Shown: in pieces, positions 21,700 to 48,600 of the stretch | How positions within the stretch are numbered: position 1 is the first letter of the stretch | Layout of the letters: each line of letters starts with the position of its first letter | From: Dimorphilus gyrociliatus | Taxonomy: Eukaryota; Animalia; Annelida | DNA length: 64,000 bases | Direction: 5' to 3' | NCBI GenBank assembly: GCA_904063045.1 | Contig: CAJFCJ010000004.1 | Location: 2,101,713-2,165,712, forward strand | The notes under the pieces: generated by a model | The model's input: only the letters and a program-made list of their open reading frames with translations | The model's database searches: none | Told to the model about the DNA's origin: nothing | Program-made: the position numbers and the translations under genes

Positions 21700-24473
21700 A
21701 TCAATTTTTCTCTTTATTTACTCTCTTGATTTAATCTTCAGTTCTCCTTTTTTTTCGCTCCTCTCTTTCTTTCTTAAAGATTTTCTCAATTTTAAGAGAA
21801 AAGCATTTTTTGGTATAGAGTATGTATATTAAATAACTTGTATATAACTATATATATATACATATATATTACACGTTCATCTGTTAAAATGTATATTTAT
21901 AGCACAATGATCAAGCTTAATAGTTTAATTATTAAAAGAATAACAACAGGTCGCACCTCATATTTTTAATTAATTACCTTCTTATCCCTATTTTACAGTA
22001 AAATTGACATGATTACTTGGTATTTTATTCATCTTATAGCGTCTTTAATGAGTGACTGTAAGCGCAATATTTTGACATTGATGTCGTGAAAATCTATACT
22101 TTCTCTATGAATAATATATATAAATATATATATATATGTTACACCTTGCATCTTACGTCATATTTTGAAGCGTTACAGCCACCTTGTTTTTCTTTGCATT
22201 TTAAATTGAGGCAATCGCTGTTATTTTCGTATATTTATTCTTGACGTTTGATTCCCTAATGATATAGTAAAATGGATATTGATGGAAGAGATGACGCTTT
22301 ATTCATATGCTTTTTCTGATACAAAAATTTGATTGATTCTTGAGGCGTGATTTGTATATATATATTACTTAAAATATCACCTTAAAAGATTAATATTTCA
22401 AAGCGTTAACCTTTCAGAATTCCTCCTTTTATCTCTCTTATTTTATGTTTCATAAAAACTTTCTTATAAACACGGAACTGTTCCTTGTCTTCTCTTTAAA
22501 CTTAAAGTTACTTTCCTAAGTCATGACCGTCATATGATTTCTTTTTTCTAAGATATCTTGTATAAAATGACCTTTCTATTGATTAGCCCCTATCCTTCAT
22601 CTTTCTCGATTCTTTTCCCATTCATTTATCCACATTTCTCTATTTTTCCATTAACCCCTTTTACAGTCTACCTGTTTACACGTTTTCCTAAAAATTCTAC
22701 TATTCACTCTACAAGAGAACAGTCATCTTATTCTAATAAAGTAATTACTTTTTTTTGTTTTCAAAGAGAAAAACTTAGCAAGGATATCTACTTTAAATCA
22801 TCGGCTATAATGGAATTTTGGGATTTTCGCTAAATCCCTTAGCGCGATTAAATGCGAAAGACGATTGAGGAATGTAGTAATTTACATACTTTTAATCAGA
22901 TAACTCAGTTAAAAATCTTCTAGAGATTCCTTGAATTAAAAAATATATTATCTTCCAAAGACCATTTCCATAAAGAAGTGTAAAGATCGAATTATTTGAA
23001 TATGAATAAGGATAATATTTGTAAAAGTAGTTAAAGAAGAGAATCAAACGAAGAAAAGCGTTTATTAGCAAAGAAAATGTATTTAATCAATTATTCTGAA
23101 GTATTTAACGAGAACTTTATAAAATTGAGATAAATTGACATTTCTAAAAGAGAAAAAAGACTAATTCTTTGCAAGTTTGTTTAACTGAACATCTCAAATT
23201 TATATTAAACAAATTAAAAAGCCACTTAACGTCACTTAGACTTTCTTGAGTTTAATTAAAAATTGTTAACTATTGCCTCTCTTAATTATTATCAAGGGAA
23301 ACCTTACAACTTCAGTTTAGCGTGGAAATAGATGCTCGTAAATTGTTTACTTTTCTTTATCTATATCAAAATATAAATAGTTACATATTACGTAATAGTA
23401 AAAACATTTGTTTTCAAATAATTTAAAGCGAACAGAAGTTTTAATTTTTCATATTAATATAATACTTATACTGGATTAGAAAGTACGTTTGTACGTGATA
23501 TAATCATAGAGACCTGCAAACACTTAGGATAAAGTAAATAATTCTAGTACATTACCCTCATACATTACAGTGTTTTGCTAAACCTATATAGTACACACAT
23601 GCACACTCACATATGTTGTATGCATATATATATATATATATATACTGTATATATGTTAGTTTCATACAATATAGAGTCAAATATTTGATAATATATTCAT
23701 ATTATAAAATTTCTCTTTTATCTTTTTTCTTACTTTTGAAAAAGTTTACAAGTCCGTTAAAAATTGATTTTACTCTAAATAACGGCCACTGAGATTAATT
23801 TTGCATAAAATTCCCCATAGAGTAGCTGAGTCTCTATTCGAAAACAATACGACCGCCCTTTCGCTAGCAAATCTGATAATCTTCTAGGCCTAAATAAGCC
23901 TATGCAATAAATTGTGGCGAATAAGCCCAACAATTCTATCATCTACATCCACACAGCCAAATTTAGAATATTTTCTGGTAAACTTCTAACCTTTTATAAA
24001 AGAACGGATATAAGAAAAAGATAATTAAGCTTTAAACGATTAGAAATAAACTACATTCCTTTCCTTTCTGCTATAAGCAATGTAAATTAAAACAATAATA
24101 TAATAACTATTAAAAATCCTATGGCTAAACGTTAAAGGACCTTGCACTTGCCATATATTATGTGTTATTGTTAATCAAGTCTCAAATTAAAAGATTGATT
24201 TTGAAGATTCGCCAAGAGGCATCATTAGGCTAAAATTTAGAATAGAGTTCTCTGTCTTTGAAAGGTACTTCGATCCATGTGTAAACCCTTAAAAAGTAAG
24301 GAACATTATAAAATTTATGAGAAAAAATTCTAAAGGTCTTATAGTGTAGTAGTATGAACAAGCAATAGGAGAAGTAATTTTGGATTCTAGCCTCAAGAGA
24401 TATACGTAAGAAATAGCTAATATTATACTTTATTTTTGGAATATATATATGTATATATAGAATATGCAACGTG

Positions 24474-28656: not shown

Positions 28657-31600
28657 ATGGACGTGGAGGAATATAGAAAGAGAGGTTAGTAAAAGTAAGA
28701 AAAAGAAGAGAAAAAGAAAAATTAAAAGTTATATAATAAAGATAAAAATAGAGATTATCCAGAAAATAGAGGAAAAAATTGAGAAACGAAATAGAATTTT
28801 AGTTATTTCTTTAATTATCTTTTTAATAAAAGTAAATAATTATTTTATACATAAACTAAAAGAAAAGAACTTTGAATTTTTTATTAGAATTTTATGTTTC
28901 ACCGAGAAAAAGTTTCTTAAAATTAAAATATTCATCCATATTTAATTTTAGTCAAAGTATTTCGTCTTTATTTTAAACAAATAGGTACTCAATGAAATAA
29001 ACTGTGTGTAAAAGAACATATTTCTTTTATTATATACAATATTTACCAAGTATATACCGTATCTTATAATACAATAGATAACTAATGTAGTATATTGCGT
29101 ATCTGCATATCAATGCATCTAATAAGAACTTGTTTGAGTTTTTCAAGTTTGCTTTATACCATCATACGAGAAGTAAAACGTTTGCTTTGTTTATTTAAAT
29201 AAAATCTATAGAGAAAATTGCTTTGTTGCAAAAAATGCAATTACATGTATAGAACATATAACAAATATATATATATATATATACATTATATATATACAGT
29301 ATATATAAATAGTATATATATATATATATATATCAACCTACTCTATACGGTATATACTGTATATATATAGTGCCGAAAGCGTTTGTAAAAATGAGATGGC
29401 CAATTACAAGCTGTTTACTAAGCAGGTGATAAGGCGTGTTTTCTATCGAAGCATCTATTTCGGCTTCTATTATTTGTTGTATTGTTAAAAGAAAATCTAG
29501 TTTCGTTGTCATTTAGAGAAAAACATCTGGTAGAAACGAGCTTCTTTTGAAGTAATGCTTGAAACGGTTTTAACTAATGTGGTCAGCGGCGACGAAGTTA
29601 AGAATTAGCTTGATTAATTAGAACCTACAGGCTAAATGGAACATGCATTGCTTTAGGGTAGAACGACGCCTACTTAAATGTTGGTTTTGTTTAGCTTTGT
29701 CTGTCTTCTCCTTCCTAGAAATATCTATGGTTTTCGCAGAGTATACTAAGGACATTTTTTTAATTGAGCCTTTACAAACATATTTATTAATCTAATTTAC
29801 TTATTATACACTTCTTTAAAAGAGTAAAACAACTGGCCTAAAACCAAAATTAAAGAGAGATATTCTTTCAAATTATATCTCTTATGGTCAGAACGCTTTT
29901 TTCAAAGAATGGAATGAAATGGAAATACTGAATCTTTTCGGTGTATATATTTATATATGTGTGTATTCGTGTATTACTTTAATTAATAAGAATCATAAGA
30001 AAGCTAATAGTATTCCAGTTGAGTAAAGATTGTCAAATTTTAGCAAATAAGATAGTAATTAATATGGTATTTCTTATGTTATCTTTCGTTAGTTATAAAT
30101 TATTTTTGGAAATCGACCAATGACAAATATTACAGAAATATATATATATATATATAGATAAACGAAAAAAAATATCCTACTTAAACAAGTTTTTATCCAT
30201 TTCTAATAGAAATTAATCTCAAATTATTCTTTTCTTATAACAAACCAGAATGAATGAAAGAATTATGATAAATGTTTCAGTAGAACTTTACTCAACCAAA
30301 ATATTAAATATATTAAAAATATGATTATTAAAACCGATGATGTTACTTGAAAACTATTTATTATTTAGTCTAATCAATGGATGATTATTTCTTATGCTAT
30401 AACGCCACCTTTACAACGATATAAAATACAAGTACTTTAAGGGTTAAGTTTGCAAGTTTTTCAAGTTTACACTTAACGTTTCCCAATTATCGAATAACTT
30501 TTAGACTTAAAATACTAAATAAAATGTTATGGTTTAATTCTTACTTATCGTCACAGGAAAGGAAATGGTCGATTATATCGCCGACTATCTTATTAATATT
30601 AGACAACGTAATGTCTTCCCAGATGTAAAACCAGGATACATGCGAGATTTACTACCCGAGAAAGCCCCAATTAACGGAGAAAGTTGGCAAGAGATATTTA
30701 ACGACGTTGAGCGTGTCGTTATGCCTGGTGTAAGTAACCTCTGTAATAACTTGTTGTAGGTCACGAAACTGATGATAAACTTGACCAAATAATTAAATTT
30801 CTAAAAATAACTTAGAAATAGTATCTTAACTTTCTAGAAGAGCAGACAAAGAATCAATATTGTTAATTTGCAGTTTCTACCATTTAACGGATATTGAAAA
30901 AATGCATATATTTACAGAAACTTCTGTTTCTTCTTTTTTCTTTTTAAAGCTTTAAAATAATTGATTAGTAAAGATATATATAAAAAGAAAAGAAACGCAT
31001 TTTTCCTACTAATTTTAGTATTAAATGTTAACAAAAGAAAAGGAAAAATGCATTATCATGTAAGTACGTTTTGCCCCTGAAAGTAGAGAGAGGCTTCAAG
31101 TGATAATTGCTACTTTTACATGTCTAAATTAGTAATGTAGAAGAAGCACATGAGCTCGAAATGTCTAAAGCATATAAACAAATAATATAAAAACACAATT
31201 TTCTACTGCAATGATTTTTGCAAAAACTAAGACAGCGACAATTCCGGCTTAAAAACATTCCGCATCTTCCGATTTCTTTAAAAAAGTGCGCAATCATTTC
31301 CCGTCCCCTAAGCTTTAAAGGAGTATGTAGATATAATTGGAAAAACGACAAATCGAGTGTTTACCATCGCGAGCGTCTCTTCAACGTCGTTTGGTTTATG
31401 TATACAAATTCTTAGGGATATTGATTTGAAAGTGATATGGCATAGTCTCCGGCTTTCGATTCATCAATTTTTTTTTTTAACAACGCTTTCTTTAATAGAT
31501 TATTCTTTACTCTGCTTCTTAATTATAAAACTTTCATATGATAAGACATATATCTTTATATTGAAAATCAGCTTATTTCAATTTTTTAATACCACTCAAT

Positions 31601-34600
31601 CGAAATGAAGCATTTTTCAGAGTATGAGCTGAAGCAGATATGTGTTTATAGTATCCAATTTTGATCCGTGCCTAATCATATTAGATATCGTAAAGATATA
31701 TACAATAGTATAGAAAGACACACTAAGTCCCAATGACCTTGCTTAAACAAAGTATCTTTCTTTCCCTGAAGATAACACACTGGCAATCCCCGCATATGCA
31801 TGCCTACTTTCCGGCCTTGAACTCGTTTCCTTCACTACTCGGAGACATGCTGGCCGATGCAATTGGTTGTTTGGGCTTTACTTGGGTAGGATTTTTTAAT
31901 TGAAACCTGTTATACGCCGCTTCTAAGTATTAAATATATTGTAAATATACAAATTTTTAACTAAAGGCATCTAGCCCTGCTTGTACTGAATTGGAAATTA
32001 TTGTTATGGATTGGCTAGCAAAAATGATCGGGTTACCATCAGAATTTTGGCATTGTACAAATTCAAAGAAGAATGTTGTAGAGAAAATGGGAGGTGGTGT
32101 AATTCAAACAACCGCTAGTGAAGCTACTTTTGTTAGCCTCCTAGCTGCTAGGACATCAGCTATCAATAGGATGAAACAAGTTTGTAAGATGAAAAGTATC
32201 GAAGTAGATATTGCAGATATCAACTCAAGATTGGTAGCATATTGCTCTGATCAGGTAAGTTTTGACGTTTATCAATAGAATTTGAATTATATTTAGCAAC
32301 AAAGTTCTGTGCTAAAATTTGAATTAATTTGTTCTAAAGCGATTTCTAATTAAAGAAAGAGAAAAAGAGAAATTATTAGTTTCCTTATACTATCTAAAAA
32401 TTAATTTATATCGCCTCAGCTATATATTATTTAATTGTTTATTCCATTGATCACCTCCTTCAGTAAGTTATTTCCGGCGTTCGATAATTAGATTAAAGAT
32501 CATGGAGGTGACATCTCAATGTCGAGTGACAACGTCATCATTCCCTTTCGATTTCACTTTAAGAGTTCTATAAAACCTTTAATTATATTTTGTTTGTCTT
32601 TTGAAAAAACTATCCATTCGGTTTAATTTGTTTAATAGTTATATTAGCTACCAAACTAAAATCGAATGAAGAAAAATAACTCTTATCTGTCTAAAAAGGG
32701 ATAAAATAATTTATTTTCAGGCTCATTCATCTGTTGAAAAAGCAAGTCTTATTGGACTTGTAACTCTTCGACTGCTTAAAACCAAAGATGATCTCTCGCT
32801 GGACACTGATCATTTGAAAGAAGTGATTAGAGAAGATGTTCAAGACGGTCTTATACCTTTCTTTGTGAGTATATCTTATAGAGAATATTTTAACATTAAA
32901 TTGTTTAAATAATTAAAATTTCAGTTATGTGCAACTTTAGGAACAACAGGAGCTTGTGCATTTGACAATTTGGAACTTATCGGACCAATATGTTAAACAT
33001 TTTTTGTAATCATATAAATTATACAGTTTCTAAATTGGTTCTTTACAGGTGAAAAGGAGCAAATATGGTTGCATATTGATGCTGCTTACGCAGGCTCAGC
33101 ATTTGTTTGCCCTGAATATCGTCACTTTATGAAAGGAATTCAATTTGCGTCTTCCTTTGCGTTTAATCCATCGAAATGGTTAATGGTACATTTTGATTGT
33201 ACTGCGATGTGGTAAGAAAATATAAACATAGACTTTGAACTGAACGAACATGATTTTATGCATCGTTTAATTATATTTAAAGGGTTAAAGATAGTGGTGC
33301 ACTTCATAGAACATTCAATGTTGAACCTTTATATCTGAAGCATGAAAATATGGGTTTGTATTCATTTTTAAATTAAAATAAAGGAAATTTTAATCATCTT
33401 TCTTTTTCTCCGTGTCTTGTTCTCCTTATTATAATATGAAAAACAGGTGCAGCTATTGACTTTATGGTAAGTTTTTTTTAAGCAGAGGCCAAATTATCTT
33501 ATGAGTAACGTATAAAAATATTTTGAAAGCATTGGCAAATTCCGCTGAGTAAAAGATTCCGATCTTTGAAGCTGTGGTTCGTACTCAGAAGCTTCGGTGT
33601 CTCTGGACTTCAAAAGCACATTCGCCAGGTGACTAAAGAAAAGAAGAGAGAAAGAAACTCTCATATTTCCTTCTTAAAAATAAATAATTACTCTTATTGC
33701 TTCAATTAAATAGTTGTTTACTTTTGTGTAATGAAACTATATGTTTAGGGCGTACGACTAGCTAAACTCTTCGAGAAGTTGTTGTTAGAGGATGGAAGAT
33801 TCGAAATACCAGCTAAAAGACATCTTGGTATGGTTGTATTCAGATTAAAAGTAAGTTTAGCTATATTCCAAAATCTTCTTAAAAGACATCTTTTTAGAAT
33901 TAAATAGAAAATCTTAACAGAAAAATATTTAATATCATATTTGCCCTTTTCCTCCAATGATTAGGTGGTAGATACCCTATCAATTACGTGACATTTCCTA
34001 AGTCGCATTGAGTCACGTGACTGGTTATATAAGAGAAATATTTATTCCTTATTTAATTTATCTATTGTTTCTAGGGTGAAAATGAGCTGACAGAGAGATT
34101 GTTGAAGAAGTTGAACGGATCTGGAAAAATTCATATGGTTCCGGCGTCTTTTAAGGAAACTTATGTAATCAGATTTACAGTAACATCTCAATTCAGTAGC
34201 GAAGAGGATATTAGAAGAGACTTCAAAATTATTCAAGAAAAGGCTAAGAGTATTCTTAACGAAGCAACTTTGCCAGTTACAGATGAAGTTGAAGAGGAGA
34301 AACCAGAAACAGAGGTTCTGGAGAGAAAGAGGCCTATAAGTGCTCGTGGTGAAATACGTAAAGAGGCACTTAGAAATAGAAGAGACGAGTTTGGTCTTAG
34401 TTTGATGCTATCTAACGTTCCAATGTCACCAAAATTTGTCAATGGATCATTTTTGGCCTTATTCGACCTACAACAGGAAACTGTTGCTGAATACGCCAAG
34501 CTGTTTAGACGTCGACCGTCTACGACTTCAGGTCTAAAGAATCGGCATCTGCTGGCCTGGACGCCTCGAAATATGCGCTTACAGGATGGCAATAAAAAGT

Positions 34601-34839
34601 TTAGTAGTTTTGACTCGGTTTTACCTACAGAAAAAGCCGTTAAGCCGTTGAGACATAGGAACGACTCCCTCGATTCGAAAATTGAAAAAATATTCGAATC
34701 ATTCGATTCCAGTTCAGATCTAACTGCTGACGAACCGGACATGGAAAGTAACGGTCACGTGACTAGGTGCGACAGATGCGGTCATCTGGTGGCGAATTGT
34801 AACAAAGCTGCTGAGTGTCGAGTCGATGGAGAAATATAA
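28657..34839 (+). CDS. Hdc: Histidine decarboxylase (PLP-dependent group II decarboxylase), 677 aa, 12 exons
   Basis: Exons 28657-28684, 30557-30729, 31772-31885, 31967-32254, 32721-32864, 32925-32991, 33049-33211, 33283-33353, 33447-33466, 33530-33628, 33749-33850 and 34075-34839 (2034 nt, in frame). HDC-type signatures [16 protein letters not shown] and [13 protein letters not shown] (DDC has NPHKW, TDC has NPNKW), plus RFTVTSQF. Confidence 0.93.
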
Positions 34840-36584: not shown

Positions 36585-39500
36585 TCAAGTTTTTCTTGGG
36601 AAGCTAATTTTTAATAATTTCAATAATTCAACTTTTCTCTCTTCTTCGGATATTGCCGCCAGCATTTGCCATTGTTTTAAATTTTCCCTATTAAATTTAA
36701 ACAATTATATTTATACAGTATATAGATATTTATATTTTTAATATATTTGTTGTTTTGTCTTACTTTGCTCCAGTAACTATGGGTAAAGCATCAGGGAATA
36801 TTTCAGTTATTAATTCGTAGCATGGCAAACAAATGCCAACGAGAAATCCAACTTCTAATTGGGGAAGTTCATAATACTTTTCGCGATCCATCATTGTAAT
36901 GGTTCCCTCCTCCTTCTTCTTTTCGTCATCACCCTTTTACGATTAAAAATTATTGAACTATTAATAACTCAAAGTAAAATTTGAATAATCAAAAAATGAA
37001 ACAATACACTAAATTAAAAAGCATTCAATGGTTCGTTAACGTTTATTTATATTTAATTCGTAATAAAGATTGAATATCTATCTGCTAGAAAGAATTTAAT
37101 AAAACCACAATAAAAGAAAGAAGTTATATTACATCACGTTACTAGTCTAAATGAATTCTCTTTAAAAAAAAAAGAAAAAAAGTTCTAGAATGGTAAGGGA
37201 GAAATAATTATGTTATTGCAATTGCGCCATCTACCGTTTATCAATTTTCTAAAATAGCACATAAACATTCATGTTAAACCTTACCTACATACGTAAGTAG
37301 AAGAATAACATATACTTTAAATTTTGATAAATGCGTATAAAGGTAATAAGTACTATTAAAGAAATATGATGATGATCAAATGGCTTTGCAAACATAAGAT
37401 AATTACGTAAATTAACTACTAAAGTAGAGAGTAGATAGCTAACTCTGCTTGATAAATTTCATTAAAGTGGGACATAGAGCTAATAATTATGATTTTAGAA
37501 ATCAGTGTCGATTGAAACGTTTAGGAATTAGAAAAGTTTATTATCATAAACATTTTTAATAAATATTTATGATATGCATTTTTAAGCTGAAAAACAAAAA
37601 TCTCTTTGTTTCTCTTAAAAGAAGAGAAATTGTTTACAAGGCAAAAAATGAAACTTTATTGTTTTGTTTCATTTAAAAATATAAGGCAAAAGGCTTTTTC
37701 GTTCGGTTTTTTTTTTTTGGAAAAAAGAAAAGAAAAAATAAGAAAAAAAGATATATATATGTTAAATTGTGCTAAAAACCATTTAAGCACCTGTTGCCAA
37801 AATTCTTCCATTATAACATTTACTAATTTCAATTGAAGATTCCAAGGTTTGTACATACTGCACAAATCAGATGCGGTCATGCTTATTGCCATAAGCAAAA
37901 GGCTGCGCAATCACATTTGAAGATTAGAAATATGAAAAAAAAACCGATTAATCGCGGCGTCGCTCAGCATCTAACAACACTAACAAAATAGGACAGCATG
38001 CTCGGAAAAAATCACATGACATATTGCATATTGTAATTAGATTTGTTTTTGCGATTTCTAACCTGTTCCCAAAACTCTTCATATAATTCTTTCACTTGTT
38101 CTGCATGAATGTCCCAAGGTTTCATATTGGCACATAAATCACAAGATGTCATTGTGATAGCCAATACCAGTTTGCTGGATAGTATATGATATTTACAAAG
38201 TATATTTAAATGATGATGATAATATATATATATGTATAAATATATACAGTATATGTATATAATATAAATATCTGAGATCTATTAAAATATGATTAAATAT
38301 AAAACGAGATGCTGAGCAAATATGCGCTTTTTATACAAGTATTGTAAACTAACCGACAATTTTCATTTTGCCAAGAAAATGTTCCTTCGTCAATGTTGTT
38401 CCTTAATTGGGATTTATTTGGAAAGAACAGTGCTAAGTCTGTAGCTAAGATACAATGCTTTATATTTGATAAAATTTGTCTGTACTCGTCCGATGATAAA
38501 GTATTGAATATATTATGGCCGTCATGCTGTAATTGCAAAAAAATAAAGTAAATAAAAGACATTTCTATATAAAATACATTTTAGCTCGGAATTTATTTTA
38601 AGTCGAATTTTGCAAATACCAAAGATATTATATCAATATAATCGGTCGTAAAACTAAAGCATACTTGTTATATCTGCCTTTTTCTCGCTTTTCATAAAAA
38701 CTACACTTTTATTTTTTATTACAGCCGAAAAGGAAATAAGATAGAATTCAAATGATACTCGAACTGAAGCCCGTGAAAAAAAAGGCTTTTATTTCAATTT
38801 TATCTACACTATAGTCTGTTCCAATTGTTTTTTAGAGTACATTTTTTAATATGTATCCTCAGTGTAAAGTAATACGCCGCTATATCTTTTGTATACGTTG
38901 TTTTTTTTCCGTATAGTGTATATACACAGTACACACGTAGATATATAAAAATGGAAGATATACAGTATATATATATATATGTATATGTATACAGTATTTT
39001 TTCTATATCTAATATTTGTACAGTTTATTGAATAATTGTAAATACCTGTAAAATGGCGACAGTTTGATTGAAATGGTGATGCTCCATTGTTGAAGTACTG
39101 TATATGGCTGCTAATGGGGAAGAACTTTTGACCATAAACGAATTGGTTTTACCTCGATGATCTAAATCATGACATAGTGAACCAACAAACAAACCGATTT
39201 TCTGTAATAATAATGTCAAGGACGATAGTTGAATAGATAAAAAAGAAAATTTTTGAGTTATTATACTTCAATCAAAGTAAATTGATTATTCGTATTCTTC
39301 AAAATCGTATACATTGCATGGGCGACACTAAATGCGTGCTCCCAATTGTGATAAGGTACATTTCTGTAGTTTTTCCTGACAGTTAAGGTAAATCTCATGA
39401 GTGTTTTCGCATCGAATCTATAGGGAGGGAAGGAAGAGAGGATTAAAAGAGCCATTAATCAATTTATTATAGTGTCATTTATCAAAGAATGATTCAGAAA

Positions 39501-39692: not shown

Positions 39693-42600
39693 TTATCTAG
39701 CTAGCTCTATCCTTATCTTTGTCCCTCCCTCTATCTCCCTCCTCCGTCTTGTTCTTTTAATATTTTGTTCCGTCTCCACATACTAAGTATTCATTTATTG
39801 TATTAATGTGATGACGTACACTCGTTTCTATTTACCTTCCATTATTAGTCTTGTGTACAAATATGAATAGCAATAAGAAAAAATTATACTTACGTCGCCA
39901 TTCCAAACAAATCATTGAACATGTAATAAACGTAAAGCGGCTTATTATCCAAAGACCAAGGTGAAAAATCGAATTTTGTAATATTTTCACATTTTTCTGG
40001 AAGTGGGACATCAGCCAACCTATTCACTTCGTCTTCAACAGCTTGAGAATGATAACTTAAAACTTCTAAAGCAACTTTATACTTTTGCTCTGATCTTCTA
40101 ATTTTATCATATAACTTGGCATGATACAAAGCTAAGCCGCAATAAATTCCGAAACTTTCAAAAGCCTCCTCGTCGTCTTTTGTAAATATTCCATTCGATT
40201 TGTTCAGCATTTGAACCACTCCGATAATTCTGTTTTTATCAACATTATTTACGAATTAATAGACAAGAAATAAGATTGAAATTAATTACTTAAAAATATC
40301 TACTTAAAATCGATAATAATTGCATTTTTGTTATCTAATCTATACAAAAGATTGTTCCATTTGTAAGAGATAGCTCTAAGGCGTGGCTAAATATCGTTTT
40401 AACTTGAAAAGAAAATAACAGATAGAAAGAAGAGTAGGGAGGAGACTTAAACTTATGTTTTTTATTTCTAAAATCTATTAATAATGTAATTAAACAGTTA
40501 AAGTGTATGGATAATTTAACACTGTAATTAAGCTTTTGAGGGTGTAAACTAATCTAATATTCCATTCTGGAAATTATTGATAAAGTCTAAAGAAAGATAA
40601 TGTAATTTGTTACCAAAAATATTACTTATACTTATAAAAAAATCGTCTTCAATGACAACAACGTTAAATTAAAGCGAATACCAGCTAAAAGCATTTTATC
40701 AATACTTCCGCATTATAAGTATTTTTTTATAGAAAAACTCAAACTGACTGTCTTTGAAGGTGAATAGAGGCTCCTATACTTTTATACGCATATATAATAT
40801 ATGCATATACGTAAATTGTGTACGCATATATAGCCTTGTATTCTTTGTACTAGAGTAGGTATTGTAGGTATTGAGTTGAATGCCTTTTCATATGTATTAT
40901 ATGTAAAAGTATATAGATAGTGTATGAAAATGATCGCTATGCCTATGAAATGTATTTATCGCTGTATAGTATCTTTAGATGTATTCTATATCTTATATAC
41001 TAATATATGTATATATATATATATATATATATTATACCCCGCGTGTAAAATTAACAGGTGTATCTAATGGATAAGTAATCTCTTGTGCATTTCAAGAAAA
41101 CGGTTGATCTTGGTTCAAAAGCATAAGTCAATAAGAATATATAAAATTTAGGCAAGGGTAAATACTGTAGAAATATTTAACCCAATTAATCAACATTATC
41201 GCATGATTTTGTGATAAGCCCTGTCGTAGCTAAGACCTACTTTAAAACAGGAACGTTGCATTGACAAGCAGTAGCCACTCTTATAATGTTGATAATCTTA
41301 TCAACTAGATACTCTCTCCCTCAACAGTTTCTTTAACTGTAAGTTCTTTGTAAAGCATAGACTCTTTGATAGCCATATACCAAATGAAACAAGCTCATAA
41401 TTCTATCAAAGATATTAATGTTAACTTTACAGAATCATTCTACTGTTGCCTTACTTTTAGGAGAGAAATGATATTTTCTTCAAAGAAAGAAAACAATATA
41501 TTCATACATTTCTCTATTAAGTTATTTAAGCTATTCATTTTAAAACCTAAAATGGGTTTTACAGCACTAACACAATCTCAGATAGGCAATGTCTATATTG
41601 GTGTGAATGTGATATTGTTTTATGAGAGATCTCACAGAGAGCATCTATTATTTTCACTATTTTGAAAGTAAGAGGAGAGTCATAACTTGAAATAGTCTTT
41701 TGTGTGAGATTTTAGAGCTCACATATGTAATGTTTAAGGGGCATATATTCTGTATATATATATAGACTCTATATATAAAGGAAAACAATCAAATGCTACT
41801 ATGAATAAATACTTTACGTACTATATTTAAAAGCTAAAAACTTTTTCAATGTTTCTTATATAAGCTATATATAGAACATTTGTTATATATAAGGTATCTA
41901 TTCATATTTAAAACTACCTTCATTCCTTTACCAGTTTATGGATCAAAAACCTTTTATCTCTAACGTTATAGTTTGACGCATTTGATTAATTTACCTATTA
42001 AAATTCTTTCAAAGAGAGCTGACTCAAGCATGCTTTTTCTATTCCATTACTATTTTTAATATGACTATTAATTTAATAGATTATCTATTCAATTATTTCT
42101 TTTTACTTAGTACTTTGTATCAGTTATCCTTATTTGTCTGTTTCCTTTCTCTCTTACTTTGAATATCAATAACAAATGAATGTTAGGGTAACTTACGTTT
42201 TCTTCAATTTTATTGGCATACACAAAATTGTTTTAGTTGTATAACCAGTTTGAATATCGACTTGTCTATTAAATCTCTCATCGCTGTAGGCATCGTGGAT
42301 ATTTACAGTTTCACCAGTTGTAGCAACGTAGCCAGCAACGCCTTTGTCCATTGGAAATCTGTATTAGAATTATGAGATTGATAGATTTATTCCCTATACG
42401 ATTTGTTTCTAGATATAAAGCTAGGAAAGAGCTTGATTTAGAAAATTAAATAAAAATCACTAAGTAAAAATATTTATTCCTAAGAAAGAATTGATGTTAG
42501 CTTTGGCCAGTGCAAGACAATAGTACTGGTCGACCTTATTTCCTTTTGAATGGAGAGTGCAGTAGATTCCTTTTCGTCTGTACCCATATCGAATACTCTG

Positions 42601-45600
42601 GCATATAGTTGTCTGCTTTTATTATCCAATAAAAATAATGCCGTCCTGTCGGCTTGAACGAGTTTTTTGGCAAAATCCTGCAAATTTGCGGTGAGGTTAA
42701 GTGCAATTAAAAAGAATTCCAAAAATTAAGTGATTAGATCGTTATATAGGAATCTTTAATCGTCTTTTTCATTTCTATAGTATTCATTAATTATGTAGTT
42801 AATTAATTCTAGTTTGTATTGCATATAGGATGCCAGATATTTTCCTTTTTGTTACTTACTATTAAAAACTATTTATCAATGAAAGGTTTTGTAAGTTAAA
42901 GTACGATAAATTAGTCAATAGAAGAGAAAAGAGGTGAAGATAAATGTAAAGGACAAGAAACTGGAAAGAAAGAGAGAAAGAGAGAGAGAGAGAATAACTA
43001 AATTGAACAAGTGAGATAAAGGCGAGAAGCACAAATCAGAAGAGAATAAGGGGAAGTAGCATTCGTCAAAGTTCTTTAAAATGTGTACAGACAGAAAAAA
43101 TTTAGAAAACTGGCAAATTAAGCATTGGACTAAAATTTCGTGTACGTTTGTTAATTAATTTGTTAAAAACTAGTGTGTAATTTAAAAATAGACTCGTCTG
43201 TAAACATCAGTCGTGTAAATTATTCTCTTTTTTTTATTTCTCTCCCGTTTCCTCTTATATAATATTGTCTTAATAAGTATACAATGAAGAGTAAAAGGAA
43301 TGAGAAAATATATTAAAGTTACAGATAGAAATACAATTTCAAAGTAATATTTTATAAATGAAAGAAATATGATGGATAGAAAATTGATAAAACAAGTTGT
43401 CCAAAAAGAATTATATAAATTAGAATTGAACCTAAATCGTGCATGCAAACCTGACTTCTTTTCTGCTGACAGTTGAAAATTCAGTATCGAAAACACGCGC
43501 ATATAACTGCTTGTTGGTTTGATCAACGAGGAAAAGAGACGCCCTATCTGCGTTTACTAGAAACTGGGCTAATTTCTGAATAACTTTCACTTAAATTTTT
43601 CATAAAAATTTTATAAGAATAAGCCTTACTCACCATTATCTTCATGATTACTGTATCCATGGAAATATCTTGAAATATAGATCTGTTTAAATTATAAGCA
43701 AAAGAAAAAAAACGTTTAATTATGATTGCGATCTATTGATCATTAAAAGTTTATCCTTAAGAGCTTACTTGGCAACACTTAAAAGGAATTCGTTCAATTT
43801 TCTCTGTCTCGTCATATTGTAGTACATCTGTTAGCAGATTAAATACATTAGATCTTAATACATAATTGATGAAACAACACTAGAAAGCAGCAGACAACAT
43901 AATTAATCAATAAAATAGATGGATGTAGATGTCTAGAGAAAAAAAATAATAATTTTGTTTTATTAATAAAATAATCGCAATCAAACTTCATAATAATAAT
44001 AATGATAATGATAATAAAAAGAATAAATAAAACAAAGTAAGAGAGAAACGAAACTAATACGAAGATGAGGGGAAAAAAATAACAAAACAACAGTAATAAA
44101 AGTTAGTATTACGACGCCAATTTGATCATCAAAATGAAATAAAAAAAGAATTTTTTATATAAAAGATATATAAAATATTTTTTTTACCAAAAACAAAAAA
44201 TATTTTCGAGAATCTTTTTTTTTTAAAAAACAAAAAAAAGGAAATATTTATAAAAATAAAAAAAAGAAGAAGAGATCTATTTTTTTTTTAAAATAAAATA
44301 AAAGTGTACATTGCACAAATTGGGTCAAACCTGAGCAAAATTCACAACTAATTCTCCCCAAACTGTTAATTCTCCCGTTATCTAAAAAAATTAGTTAAAC
44401 ACAAAAAAAACTTAGCATTAAAATAATTAGAAAATTAGTATTGTTAAAATGGCTTTGAAGCTAAGACTATGGAACAATTGAAGATAACTAGGCAATTATT
44501 TCATGGCGAATAAAATAAAATTAAATTTTCTATTAAAGAAAATTAAATTAATTCACACTTTTAATTTTTTTTTATTGTCCTTTTATAATTGCCTAAAAAT
44601 CTCTATAGCGCCTTTTTTATAAGCACGATATCATACCTTTTGACACGGTAGAAGGTAATTTAAATGCGTTAATAATATTTCTCCTGACTGATTTTATATA
44701 AAAGAAGGTAAAAGAAATAGTAAAAAAACTTTTCATATATATATATAATTACATATAAATATCCAAATGTCTCATATTAATTTTTATACATATATATATA
44801 TAGAATACATATTTTTATGTTTCTTTTATATATAAAGTACAATATTCACCTCTTGTTCGTCCTCATTAAATGGTGTATGCCCAACAGTCCTGTATAATTC
44901 AATGACACCCAATAACTCTTCCGTGTCCAAATGAATAATAGGAAAGGCGAGAACAGATTGAGCACTTCCTCCATCATTTGCCGGACCTAATCCTTCAGGA
45001 TATCTATCATCCTAGATAAAAAGTAATTCGTAATAATTTATAATTGTCAACGTATCATGAAAATCGTTAAATTCCATTGTAATACTAACTATAATATGCT
45101 ATCTCTATTTTATATTGAAAAGAGAGACAATAGACTATTAAATAATACTATATAAACAACTAAAAACGGAAAAGGATGAATATATATGCTTTAAGAAAAA
45201 GTACGAAATCCGATAACTTACTTAAAGAAAAAAAATAAGAATCCTATTATAGCTAAAAATGATTAATCTATTAGATTAACAAAAATATATTTACCCCAAG
45301 AATTTCATCAACCCTCGTTGTTTTCCTTACATGAGCAACAAAGGCGGCCAGACAACTTCCTTCGCCAACGTCTCGGACCAAAGGAGAAACCGATCGATCA
45401 CTATTATTACGCAATAGAATTAGAGGAAGAGAGATAGATAAATATATAGATGGATAGATAGATAGATGATTAGATAGATAGACGGCTATATAGATAGATG
45501 GTTAGATAGAGCGGAAGAGAGTAAAAGAAAGAGAGAGAGAGAGAGTAGGAGGGATGGAATGAAAGATAAAAAACAAATAAGATATATATATATATATATG

Positions 45601-48600
45601 CAGAGAGAAAGAGAGAGAGTGATGAAAAAAGAACATTTCAAATAATGTAAAAGCAGAAAAAGTAAAATATATAAACAATGAAAAAGTAGTAAATAACCTG
45701 AATTTTTCAGTAAAGTAATATATCTGGTTAGTGCTGCTATCGCACATGTACAAATTTCCTCCATCTGCGTTGATTGCTGTTTCCATGTATAATACATTTA
45801 TAATTTATTAATTATGAATTATTTAGACATTTTACCTTTAGCTACAGTTTGAGATAATTCGTATAAAAGGAAGGCTTGATTAGGCTGTTGCCAGATATTT
45901 TTTGTTAATTGAGCTAAATGTTGGCATTTTTCGACCTGTATAAGAATTTAATAGTATGGACAGGATATAAAAAAATAATAATCAATCTTTCTTTTCGTGA
46001 TGAAACCTTTTCCGTATCTTCGAGAGAACTTTCATTTCCAGAAGTATTTTTGTCTTTTTCTGCATTGTAATCTTCTAGTAAAATAACAAAGACATCATTC
46101 ATATTAATATATGTATGTGTTGTAAATTGTGAAAATAAATTACCGTTGATTTGTCTATAACGTTTTTTAACCCAATTTTCAACTATATCCGGTGGTACAT
46201 GTCGAAAAATATATTTTTCTAAAAATTCCGGATGCTCCTTCAAGTAAATTTTTACTGAATCTTCGTTCATTTCTGTATAATAACAAAAATTAATTGATTA
46301 AATTTACAAGTAAGAATTTTGATCCTTTGATGAAATTAATGAATCAATTGAACAATCGATAATCAAGTATTTCTCCATTCAGGAGAGATTTCTAGCTAAG
46401 CAATATTGGATTTATGTTAATTAGTTTGATTGATTCATTTTTCTTAGTAATTTAATTGAAATTTTAATTAAAAACGTTATGACCAACTCTATTGATTTCA
46501 ACTTGGGTTTCGGAATATTTTATACGCGACCGTAGAGTAAAATGTTTCGTTTTATCCGTCACTAGCTAAGGCCGAATATTTTATGCCGGACAAGGACGAT
46601 TGTTCACTATAGCGATGAATTTGTCATACTAATCTTTGATAATTCGCTAGTAGATTAAAAGGCCTATTTTTTTTTTAAATGTAAAAACACTTAACTTCTC
46701 TATACATGCTTAGCGCTAATATACAAACACTTTCCCGCTAAGTTCTTGTTTAAGTTAAGTATTTAATTCAGTACATTGAATTATACCGAAAGTTTAAATA
46801 ACTTAATAGTGGAAAACGAAAGAGAATGTGAGAAGAAAATAGAGATTTTTAAAAAGTTAGAAAGGGTAAGCGTATTATTATTTCTTTTTATTAAAAATAT
46901 CATGTTAATCAATCTACGCCTCTATCCATCTTTATTAATATAAAGAATGTTGCGGGATAGGGGTGCGGGCGCAGGGGTAAGAGGGAAACTAATAAGATAT
47001 TTTAGGAACGAAATAGCTGTCGGTATTTTTGGAAAGGAAAAAGAAGTATTGTTGAAAAGTTCTGTTAGAAGACGAGAACAAGGGAGAGAAAGAGAGAGAG
47101 GCGTGGGGAGGAGAAGGAAAAAAAGAAAAGTAATCACTTTACTATACACCTCCATTTAAATGGATTGAAAACATATAAAATCAATTCATTAAATAACGAT
47201 ATTTTAAAGATATTTTAAAAAGATTAAAATGTTCTCTTTTCCTAGTTAATTGATTTATAAAAAATGATGACATATAAAACTGTCGAGGAACCTGTAAAAG
47301 CTCTTAAAATATTTGTCTAGGCTCTCTGTCTTAAGCCTAGATGACTGTAAATATAATCAATAACTTTTCATTACAAACAACAATGTAAAAAAAGAAACTA
47401 CAAGTAGAATAAGCATAAAAAAATTGAGAGTGAGAGAGACAGAGAGAAGAAAAAAACGAAAGAAAAAGAGAAAAAAAAAAAGGAGTACAAAAGAAAACTT
47501 GCACCTTACCAACTCTCTTTTAATAAAAGAAACGCAAAAGTAAAGTCACCAAGACACTCTAATCCCTTCTTCAAAACATATTTTCACTAAAATTGAATTG
47601 TCCATTCAACGAATAGGTCTGGTTGTTGAAAATATCTAACGTATGTTACATATATGTTATTACAGATACATATATGTAGTTGTAATATCTAACTAGGTAT
47701 ATTTGCGAAGATAAAAAAGACACAAGTTGGGATAATAACAATCTCTGCTAGCTTTTATCTACAGAGCACTTGATATCTGATAGCTAGTAATTTTTCACAA
47801 GGCATTTTTAGGATACACAGTAAGAGAGAGTTAGTCTTTCTACTTTGCTAATTACACCTAACTTTGCCCTAAACTGTCGTTGAATGTTGAAAAAGAGATT
47901 ATTCCATTACAAAAGAATATTTCACTCACCTCTATTCGAATTGTGTAGGCCATTCAGCGGTTGACCTGAATGTATTGCTCCGGATTAGACAAGGATTAAT
48001 AAAAGAAATTAAAAATAAAGAAAAGAGAAGAAATAGAAGAAAACCTTCAGATTTTCTTCTTTATAGAAAATTTATATATTATCAATAAAGAAACTATTTA
48101 ATTGATATGAGATAAGAGTTAGTCGCTTATTAATTTTTACTACTACCGTATGTTTTTCAAATTGTGATCAAACTATATATTTAACCGAATGTCAATAAAC
48201 AGGTGCTAAATCACAACGTCAGGTTAGAGCTCAGTAGCATAGTCGATATTGAATAGGTTGATATATGATTAGTTAAAGTCATTACAGTTTTATAAAAATA
48301 ATACAATTGTGCAGATAAACATATTCCTCTATTATTAAGATATTATCAATATCATATATATATATATATATATTATTTATTACTAAGAGCGAATACTCTG
48401 TTTTGCACAGTTTTTCTTATAAACAGCATATCTACTTGCATATATACTCTATATAACAGAGTTTAATTGTAAATATAGCTTGTATTTTTAACCAACCGTT
48501 TTACGATGATATTAATAAGTTTAATAGATTAATTTATCATCAAAAGTCCTTTTCTTTTAGAAACAAACACCATTCGTCTTATAAGATATACTTCCAAAGG

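What the first reader, a model, noticed from the sequence alone, without database searches (positions are those of the whole stretch)
36853..36855. The 'invariant' nucleotide-recognising glutamine of the PDE is glutamate
Seen: the constitutive exon reads [26 protein letters not shown], with codon GAA at 36855-36853. Established: class I PDEs have an invariant Gln three residues before the clamp Phe (PDE10A2 Q726/F729, PDE5 Q817/F820, PDE4D Q369/F372) that hydrogen-bonds the purine. The metal ligands (YHN..H, HDLDH, D of the alternative exon) are intact. Inference: a carboxylate here can only accept H-bonds unless protonated. That could favour guanine N1/N2 or another nucleotide, and would make specificity depend more on the residues supplied by the alternative exons. 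It is one base from CAA, so an assembly error or polymorphism is possible.
Basis: partly seen in the sequence, partly recalled or inferred. Interest (0 to 1): 0.7.

Follow-up and report, generated by a model that had tools for sequence, protein, structure and literature searches.

The report
Glutamate replaces PDE10's invariant glutamine
A small marine worm's PDE10-type cyclic-nucleotide phosphodiesterase really does carry glutamate where all textbook enzymes have the base-reading glutamine. The same glutamate sits on an old 27-codon exon cassette shared by annelids, bivalves and snails, and oysters swap it against a glutamine cassette by alternative splicing.

Summary
Codon GAA at 36855-36853 (minus strand) encodes Glu at the position of the invariant purine-binding Gln (PDE10A2 Q726), three residues before the clamp Phe. 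It is not an error: contigs of a related species keep GAA while 25 of the exon's 57 codons differ synonymously.

It is also not private to this animal.
- All 44 bivalve and gastropod PDE10/"pde-5" clusters examined read L-E-VGF; 74 clusters from other phyla read Q.
- The Glu/Gln codon is the last codon of an 81-nt cassette.
- Crassostrea virginica has a Q cassette followed by an E cassette, and both appear in RefSeq isoforms. An E form also occurs in cDNA-like assemblies matching Magallana gigas.
- The annelids Owenia and Ridgeia carry an unannotated E cassette behind their annotated Q cassette.
- Pomacea and this window have only E. Here it is fused to the next exon, so E is constitutive.

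The biochemical effect is untested. The only precedent, the engineered PDE9 Q453E mutant, stays active but loses cGMP affinity 25-fold and cAMP affinity 2.5-fold.

I found no description of this in the searchable literature.

The parts
36853..36855 (-). GAA codon = Glu at the position of the invariant purine-binding Gln (PDE10A2 Q726)
   Evidence: The same GAA occurs in the related species' contigs L001/L002.
36853..36933 (-). E cassette part of the exon (27 codons, [27 protein letters not shown]). It is homologous to the separate 81-nt E mini-exons of Owenia, Ridgeia, Crassostrea and Pomacea.
   Evidence: An AG acceptor lies at 36935-36934. There is no intron after the Glu codon here.
36764..36852 (-). 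Rest of the same exon ([29 protein letters not shown] + 2 nt of a split Lys codon). It holds the clamp Phe at +3. In the other taxa this is a separate 'common' exon.
   Evidence: The donor is GTAAGA, from 36763 downward on the minus strand.
36585..36687 (-). Last coding exon (..[33 protein letters not shown], then stop)
37791..37902 (-). Alternative pocket exon B (..[36 protein letters not shown]). It holds the metal-site Asp and has Met at the PDE10A Tyr693 position.
38063..38174 (-). Alternative pocket exon A (..[37 protein letters not shown]). It has Tyr at the Tyr693 position.
38323..39419 (-). Three upstream catalytic exons at about 39419-39264, 39201-39046 and 38532-38323. They carry YHNWEH, CHDLDH, TMEHHHF and ATDLA. 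Boundaries are approximate, taken from tblastn matches.
39896..46288 (-). N-terminal, GAF-A, GAF-B and linker exons of the same gene. Approximate; taken from tblastn with the oyster and Owenia orthologues.

Best explanation
The gene is the PDE10-type (GAF-GAF-catalytic, 'pde-5' in NCBI naming) phosphodiesterase of a lophotrochozoan.

Shown:
- Its Glu is real and selected.
- It is the last codon of a 27-codon cassette. In a model of the oyster orthologue, that cassette encodes the end of helix 14, the M-loop and the first turns of helix 15.
- In Owenia, Ridgeia and Crassostrea the cassette exists twice in tandem, first a Gln version and then a Glu version. Both are phase 0/0 with AG/GT sites.
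- In Crassostrea both versions are in RefSeq isoforms, and an E form is in cDNA-like assemblies. The Gln/Glu choice is therefore made by mutually exclusive splicing.
- In this genome, as in the snail Pomacea, the Gln cassette is absent. Here the intron behind the Glu codon is also lost, so every transcript encodes Glu.

Inferred:
- The enzyme stays catalytically active.
- The carboxyl(ate) weakens or re-biases the hydrogen bonds to the purine. It probably raises Km and shifts the cAMP:cGMP ratio. By analogy with PDE9 Q453E, cGMP binding would be penalised more than cAMP binding.
- Sensitivity to ligands that need the Gln NE2 donor would also change.
- The residue before the Glu is always Leu or Met, against mostly Ser or Asn (64 of 74 clusters) before Gln. 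This may bury the carboxyl group and raise its pKa.
For: Reality of the Glu: codon and alignment; second species: GAA kept, 25 synonymous against 1 replacement change.

Distribution: 28 found E only in the nearest representatives (Nucella, Ostrea and a metagenome fragment). In some searches, 44 of 120 cluster representatives have L-E, all from bivalves or gastropods, and 74 have Q.

Splicing in oysters: searches show isoforms that differ only in the cassette. One search gives the genomic order in C. virginica L003: Q 23628-23711, then E 24291-24371. In some searches, P0116 comes from 3.3-kb contigs with a 909-aa ORF and is identical to M. gigas isoform X6 except for the E cassette and 5 N-terminal residues.

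Other taxa: searches give Owenia Q 44011-44091 plus E 44433-44513, with splice sites. Searches give Ridgeia Q 30518-30598 plus E 32033-32113. One search shows Pomacea has E only. Searches show the window and L001/L002 have E only.

Covariation: in 46 aligned catalytic domains, only the E/Q column and the column before it separate E rows from Q rows.

Fold and family: the AF2 model of the oyster E isoform has pLDDT 87.9, and its best structural matches are PDE10A at TM 0.84-0.85. PDE10A is also the best PDB sequence match, at 300 bits against 245 for PDE5.

Precedent: PDE9 Q453E remains active, with cGMP Km raised 25-fold, cAMP Km raised 2.5-fold and kcat halved (PMC3069055).
Against: - No raw reads or RNA were laid on this window, so use of the exon in this animal's mRNA was not seen here.
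- No enzyme with a natural Glu has been assayed, and PDE9 binds cGMP differently from PDE10. The direction of any specificity change is therefore a guess.
- The E cassettes of Owenia and Ridgeia are unannotated. Their expression was not shown, only an intact frame, canonical splice sites and a matching position.
- The 25 cassette residues outside the last two do not group the E cassettes together. A single origin rests on position and on the shared [L/M]-E ending.
- The nemertean Lineus has two cassette versions, both with Gln.
- The joined protein of this window was never searched or folded, under an operator rule. Structural statements come from the oyster orthologue.
Confidence: 0.72

Rival explanations
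1. Assembly or sequencing error, or a private polymorphism one base away from CAA.
For: GAA and CAA differ by one base. Raw reads could not be checked.
Against: A related species' independent contigs keep GAA amid 25 synonymous changes. The homologous cassettes in Owenia, Ridgeia, Crassostrea and Pomacea end in GAG. All 44 bivalve and gastropod clusters have E.
Confidence: 0.01
2. The Glu marks decay of function: a relaxed or non-catalytic PDE10 (pseudo-enzyme or nucleotide-blind scaffold).
For: The same genome is said to hold catalytically dead PDE10- and PDE2-like genes (earlier notes s1-081686 and s1-082500, unchecked). Gln is a key substrate contact.
Against: All metal-site motifs and the clamp Phe are intact. 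The exon is under strong purifying selection, 25 synonymous against 1 replacement change. Glu is kept in two phyla and is the only form in snails and many bivalves. PDE9 Q453E keeps half its kcat.
Confidence: 0.07
3. One reading: the carboxylate accepts H-bonds from guanine N1-H/N2-H2, or from another base, making the enzyme cGMP-preferring or able to take non-canonical cyclic nucleotides.
For: This is chemically plausible, since carboxylates read guanine N1/N2 in other protein families (general knowledge). Nothing in the sequence data excludes it.
Against: In PDE9, Q453E cut the cGMP/cAMP efficiency ratio from 337 to 29, which is the opposite direction. No pocket residue outside the cassette co-varies with E.
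Confidence: 0.15
4. The Glu of this worm arose independently of the mollusc Glu (convergence), rather than from one ancestral Q/E cassette pair.
For: Cassette residues outside the last two do not cluster the E cassettes. Lineus has two cassettes, both Q. The bryozoan Watersipora has one Q cassette. Octopus isoforms show Q.
Against: The tandem order is the same (Q, then E) between pocket exon B and the common exon in two annelids and an oyster. All cassettes are 81 nt (84 nt for the oyster Q cassette), all are in the same phase, and all E cassettes end in [L/M]-E.
Confidence: 0.2

Closest known systems
Vertebrate PDE10A (dual-substrate, GAF-containing class I phosphodiesterase; e.g. PDB 2OUR, 5I2R)
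   Same: It shares the GAF-GAF-catalytic layout, the metal-site motifs and the clamp Phe three residues after the site. PDE10A is the best PDB match of the orthologous oyster catalytic domain, at 300 bits with 45-46% identity and model TM 0.84-0.85.
   Different: Gln726 is Glu here. Gly725 is Leu. Tyr693 is Tyr in pocket exon A and Met in pocket exon B. The invertebrate gene carries tandem alternative exons inside the catalytic domain, which I do not know from vertebrate PDE10A (own knowledge; none turned up).
Engineered PDE9A2 Q453E mutant (PDB 3QI3/3QI4; Hou et al. 2011, PMC3069055)
   Same: It has the same Gln-to-Glu change at the invariant position. The fold was unchanged and the enzyme stayed active. 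Binding of a selective inhibitor that needs the Gln fell more than 1800-fold.
   Different: It is a laboratory mutant of a cGMP-specific, GAF-less family. There the Glu sits beside Glu406, which has to be protonated. The case here is natural, old, and accompanied by a Leu/Met at -1.
Mollusc and annelid 'pde-5'/PDE10 orthologues (e.g. Crassostrea virginica XP_078317258 E form vs XP_078317253 Q form; Owenia CAH1773313; Ridgeia KAK2187073)
   Same: They are orthologous genes with the same A/B pocket exons and the same E cassette ending in [L/M]-E.
   Different: Those three species also keep a Q cassette upstream of the E cassette, and an intron after it. This genome has lost both, as Pomacea has lost the Q cassette.

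Membership tests
Class I cyclic-nucleotide phosphodiesterase (Pfam PF00233 PDEase_I) | Significant match to the PDEase_I profile | tested here: met
   Six catalytic exons each match PF00233, with E-values from 1.5e-5 to 6e-19. The Glu exon scores 9.7e-8, above the gathering score.
Class I cyclic-nucleotide phosphodiesterase (Pfam PF00233 PDEase_I) | HD-type metal site: H..H, HD..H, E, D ligands | tested here: met
   YHNWEH, CHDLDH, TMEHHHF and ATDLA are present, and both pocket exons carry the CDLC / SDLC Asp.
Class I cyclic-nucleotide phosphodiesterase (Pfam PF00233 PDEase_I) | 'Invariant' purine-scanning Gln on helix 15. This is a hallmark residue, not what defines homology. | tested here: not met
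   It is Glu (GAA) here. That is the finding itself. Membership rests on homology, the metal site and the fold, and all of those are met.
Class I cyclic-nucleotide phosphodiesterase (Pfam PF00233 PDEase_I) | Hydrophobic clamp Phe three residues after the Gln position | tested here: met
   The sequence reads L-E-V-G-F.
PDE10 family (orthologues of vertebrate PDE10A / C. elegans pde-5) | Tandem GAF domains N-terminal to the catalytic domain | tested here: met
   There are GAF Pfam matches on upstream exons. Exon-by-exon tblastn matches run along the whole oyster and Owenia orthologues, including GAF-A and GAF-B.
PDE10 family (orthologues of vertebrate PDE10A / C. elegans pde-5) | Catalytic domain closer to PDE10A than to PDE5/6/11/2 | tested here: inconclusive
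   For the window this could be tested only exon by exon. The Glu exon alone ties PDE10A with PDE5/6, both at 34 bits. Its orthologues, which are 56-84% identical to the window's catalytic exons (28-47% over GAF-A), match PDE10A clearly best: 300 bits against 245 for PDE5 and 222 for PDE2. The joined model of this gene was not searched, under an operator rule.
PDE10 family (orthologues of vertebrate PDE10A / C. elegans pde-5) | Hydrolysis of cAMP and cGMP | not testable with these tools
   This needs an enzyme assay.

The most novel reading that the evidence does not exclude
Lophotrochozoan PDE10 implements the debated 'glutamine switch' at the RNA level. A splice-selected 27-codon cassette swaps the base-reading Gln for a Glu buried next to Leu or Met. 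This gives two enzymes from one gene with materially different cAMP/cGMP selectivity or pH dependence, with a protonatable Glu acting as donor or acceptor. Lineages such as this worm and the snails have fixed the Glu form.
Probability: 0.35. Interest if true: 0.85.

Novelty: new variant of a known kind. Interest (0 to 1): 0.72.

Why it matters
The glutamine on helix 15 is described as invariant in class I PDEs. It is central to the long-running argument about how these enzymes tell cAMP from cGMP, and most PDE inhibitors bind to it.

A natural Glu at this position, conserved in two phyla, offers matched enzyme pairs for testing what this residue contributes. In some species it alternates with Gln by mutually exclusive splicing while the rest of the protein stays the same.

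It also shows three practical things:
- Public gene models of annelids miss the E cassette.
- Drugs or probes designed on the Gln contact may not act on mollusc or annelid PDE10.
- Catalytic-pocket residues can be placed under splicing control.

Tried and rejected
- **Metagenome scans.** An exact 35-mer around the codon and a degenerate pattern for [13 protein letters not shown][E/Q]VGF both found nothing.
- **Word search with the exon alone.** It found only the related species' 44-aa ORF.
- **Genomic loci.** Ostrea, Lineus and Tubulanus were not on record, and the Octopus gene is too long. Nemertean and cephalopod cassette structure is therefore known from isoforms only.
- **Second word search (Owenia query).** It brought no further annelids.
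- **Cassette similarity matrix.** It was uninformative about orthology.
- **Wang et al. 2007** on PDE10A substrate complexes (PMC2001251) is not held. Statements about the Gln726 contacts are from memory.
- **Left out under an operator rule.** Orthologues with references were used instead.
- **Literature searches.** They found no natural Gln replacement and no catalytic-domain alternative exons in PDE10. This library lacks most subscription journals, so absence is weak evidence.

Full report
**1. The observation.**
On the minus strand, the exon from 36933 (after an AG at 36935-36934) to 36764 (before GTAAGA) reads [56 protein letters not shown](K). Codon 27 is GAA at 36855-36853.

- phmmer against all PDB chains aligns this Glu with the Gln of human PDE10A (..VPQGQLGF..) and of PDE5/6 (..PKLQVGF..), with the clamp Phe at +3.
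- Pfam PDEase_I matches this exon and five others. GAF matches lie upstream.
- The metal-site motifs are intact.

**2. Error or polymorphism?**
The one reads call was lost to a filter on places 38218-38261, which lie in an intron. I worked beside those places and sent none of their letters to any search tool afterwards.

Independent evidence came from the protein word search. A 44-aa ORF from two Logan contigs of other runs (L001, L002) is the same exon in a related species. Over the 171 aligned bases, 27 differ. That is 25 synonymous codon changes and one replacement, the introns have diverged, and the Glu codon is GAA in both. This shows strong purifying selection on a Glu and rules out an error.

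**3. Relatives.**
A search of 1.84 billion representatives with the exon found 95 proteins, and a 96th, P0001, was tabulated with them. Glu at this column occurs only in P0001 and the nearest hits: Nucella lapillus, Ostrea edulis and a metagenome fragment. One further E in the table, in P0053, comes from a spurious low-identity alignment.

I then searched with the oyster catalytic domain and tabulated 120 cluster representatives.
- 44 read L-E-VGF, and all are bivalves or gastropods. They include Ostrea, Saccostrea, Pinctada, Mytilus, pectinids, Mactra, Dreissena, Mercenaria, Potamilus, Mya, Solemya, Gigantopelta, Haliotis, Patella, Littorina, Babylonia, Nucella, Pomacea, Elysia, Bradybaena, Physella, Biomphalaria and Bulinus.
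- 74 read Q. They include Octopus, nemerteans, Owenia, Ridgeia, a bryozoan, rotifers, echinoderms, hemichordates, amphioxus, arthropods, nematodes, a tardigrade, cnidarians, Trichoplax and a vertebrate PDE10A.

These proteins are PDE10-type. Human PDE10A is by far their best PDB match, at 300 bits against 245 for PDE5. The window's exons are 56-84% identical to the oyster and Owenia orthologues across the catalytic exons and 28-47% over GAF-A, matching them through GAF-A, GAF-B and the catalytic domain.

**4. The cassette.**
One Crassostrea virginica cluster did not fit the pattern. Aligning its isoforms showed that they differ only in a 27/28-residue segment ending at this very column. One version is GDQEKVKIGYVQNPIMDRDKVNELPESQ and the other is GDEERSQGLTPMPMMDRQKKNELPHLE.

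In the genomic locus L003 these are two neighbouring mini-exons: Q at 23628-23711, then E at 24291-24371. They sit between the A/B pocket exons and a common exon that starts with VGF. The Gln/Glu codon is the last codon of the mini-exon, and both have AG/GT sites and phase 0.

A protein from 3.3-kb contigs that carry a 909-aa ORF must be cDNA, because the C. virginica orthologue spans 25 kb of genome. That protein is identical to Magallana gigas isoform X6, a Q form, except for the E cassette and 5 N-terminal residues. The E form is thus seen in cDNA-like assemblies, and the Q form is represented by RefSeq isoform models.

**5. Annelids.**
I did not check this.

The annotated Owenia and Ridgeia proteins have Gln, but their loci hold a second, unannotated cassette downstream of the Q cassette.
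- Owenia L004 44433-44513 reads GDEEKNQGQTPITMMDRTKSDELPMME.
- Ridgeia L006 32033-32113 reads GDLEKAAGQKPRPMMDRSNRHKLPQLE.

Both are 81 nt long, with an intact frame and canonical splice sites.

Other taxa give this picture:
- The snail Pomacea has only an E cassette.
- The bryozoan Watersipora has only a Q cassette.
- Lineus isoforms show two cassette versions, both Q.

In the window and in L001/L002 there is one cassette only, the E one, and no intron follows it. The simplest reading is an old Q/E tandem pair at least as old as the annelid-mollusc ancestor, with loss of Q in several lineages including this one. Convergence is not excluded, because the short cassettes do not resolve a tree.

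**6. What travels with the Glu.**
In an alignment of 46 catalytic domains, only two columns separate E rows from Q rows. They are the site itself and the residue before it: Leu against Ser, Asn and others. Owenia's E cassette has Met there.

Because Q and E isoforms of one gene share everything else, the switch is self-contained in the cassette. An AlphaFold model of the oyster B+E catalytic domain (pLDDT 87.9) places the cassette at the end of helix 209-232, the loop 233-242 and the start of helix 243-271, with the Glu inside that helix. Its best structural matches are PDE10A at TM 0.84-0.85. From general knowledge of PDE structures, that loop is the M-loop, a mobile wall of the substrate pocket.

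**7. Mechanism.**
Two things are shown. The Glu is selected, and it is splice-selectable in some species. The rest is inferred.

The only experimental precedent found is PDE9A2 Q453E.
- Its fold was unchanged.
- kcat was halved.
- Km for cGMP rose from 0.113 to 2.8 µM, and Km for cAMP from 501 to 1233 µM.
- The cGMP/cAMP efficiency ratio fell from 337 to 29.
- IBMX inhibition was about 2-fold weaker, and a Gln-dependent inhibitor was more than 1800-fold weaker.
- A neighbouring carboxyl group appeared to be protonated.

By analogy, I expect the natural Glu forms to be active enzymes with weaker, re-biased base recognition and altered pharmacology. The Leu/Met at -1 may favour a protonated Glu.

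**8. Novelty.**
Six literature searches found neither a natural replacement of this Gln nor alternative catalytic exons in PDE10. The library is incomplete, so this is weak evidence of novelty.

I saw both types again in Owenia, Crassostrea, Pomacea, Watersipora, Lineus and Tubulanus, and only the B type in Ridgeia. The Q/E cassette is a second, adjacent switch.

**9. Limits.**
- No reads or RNA were laid for this species.
- Expression of the annelid E cassettes was not shown.
- No biochemistry was done.
- The joined protein of this window was neither searched nor folded, under an operator rule.
- The PDE10A contact details are from memory, because the key paper is not held.

Noticed in passing
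window ~43593-43444 and ~42686-42534 (minus strand): There is a third tandem exon pair in the same gene, in GAF-B..[35 protein letters not shown].. and ..[32 protein letters not shown]... Both have AG/GT flanks. Two versions of this segment also occur among isoforms of Haliotis, Lineus and Tubulanus.
   Followed up: partly
L004 44433-44513 (Owenia fusiformis) and L006 32033-32113 (Ridgeia piscesae): The intact E cassettes, with canonical splice sites, are missing from the public protein models of both annelids. Those models show only the Q cassette.
   Followed up: yes
L004 39998-40111, 40301-40414, 42901-43014: Owenia has three copies of the pocket exon, two A-type and one B-type, not two.
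   Followed up: no
window 30565-34839 (+ strand): A multi-exon gene resembling histidine/aromatic-amino-acid decarboxylases by eye (no search run) lies tail to tail with the PDE gene. Its last exon is a 246-aa ORF with an acidic, low-complexity tail.
   Followed up: no
P0160 (Biomphalaria glabrata model), P0201 (Bradybaena similaris): P0160 strings both GAF-B alternative exons together, which looks like an annotation artefact. P0201 is a second stylommatophoran PDE10-like protein that reads L-Q at the site, so some snails may have a Gln paralogue.
   Followed up: no
The tool says the filter also trips by chance. I did not examine the stretch or send it to any search tool afterwards.
   Followed up: no
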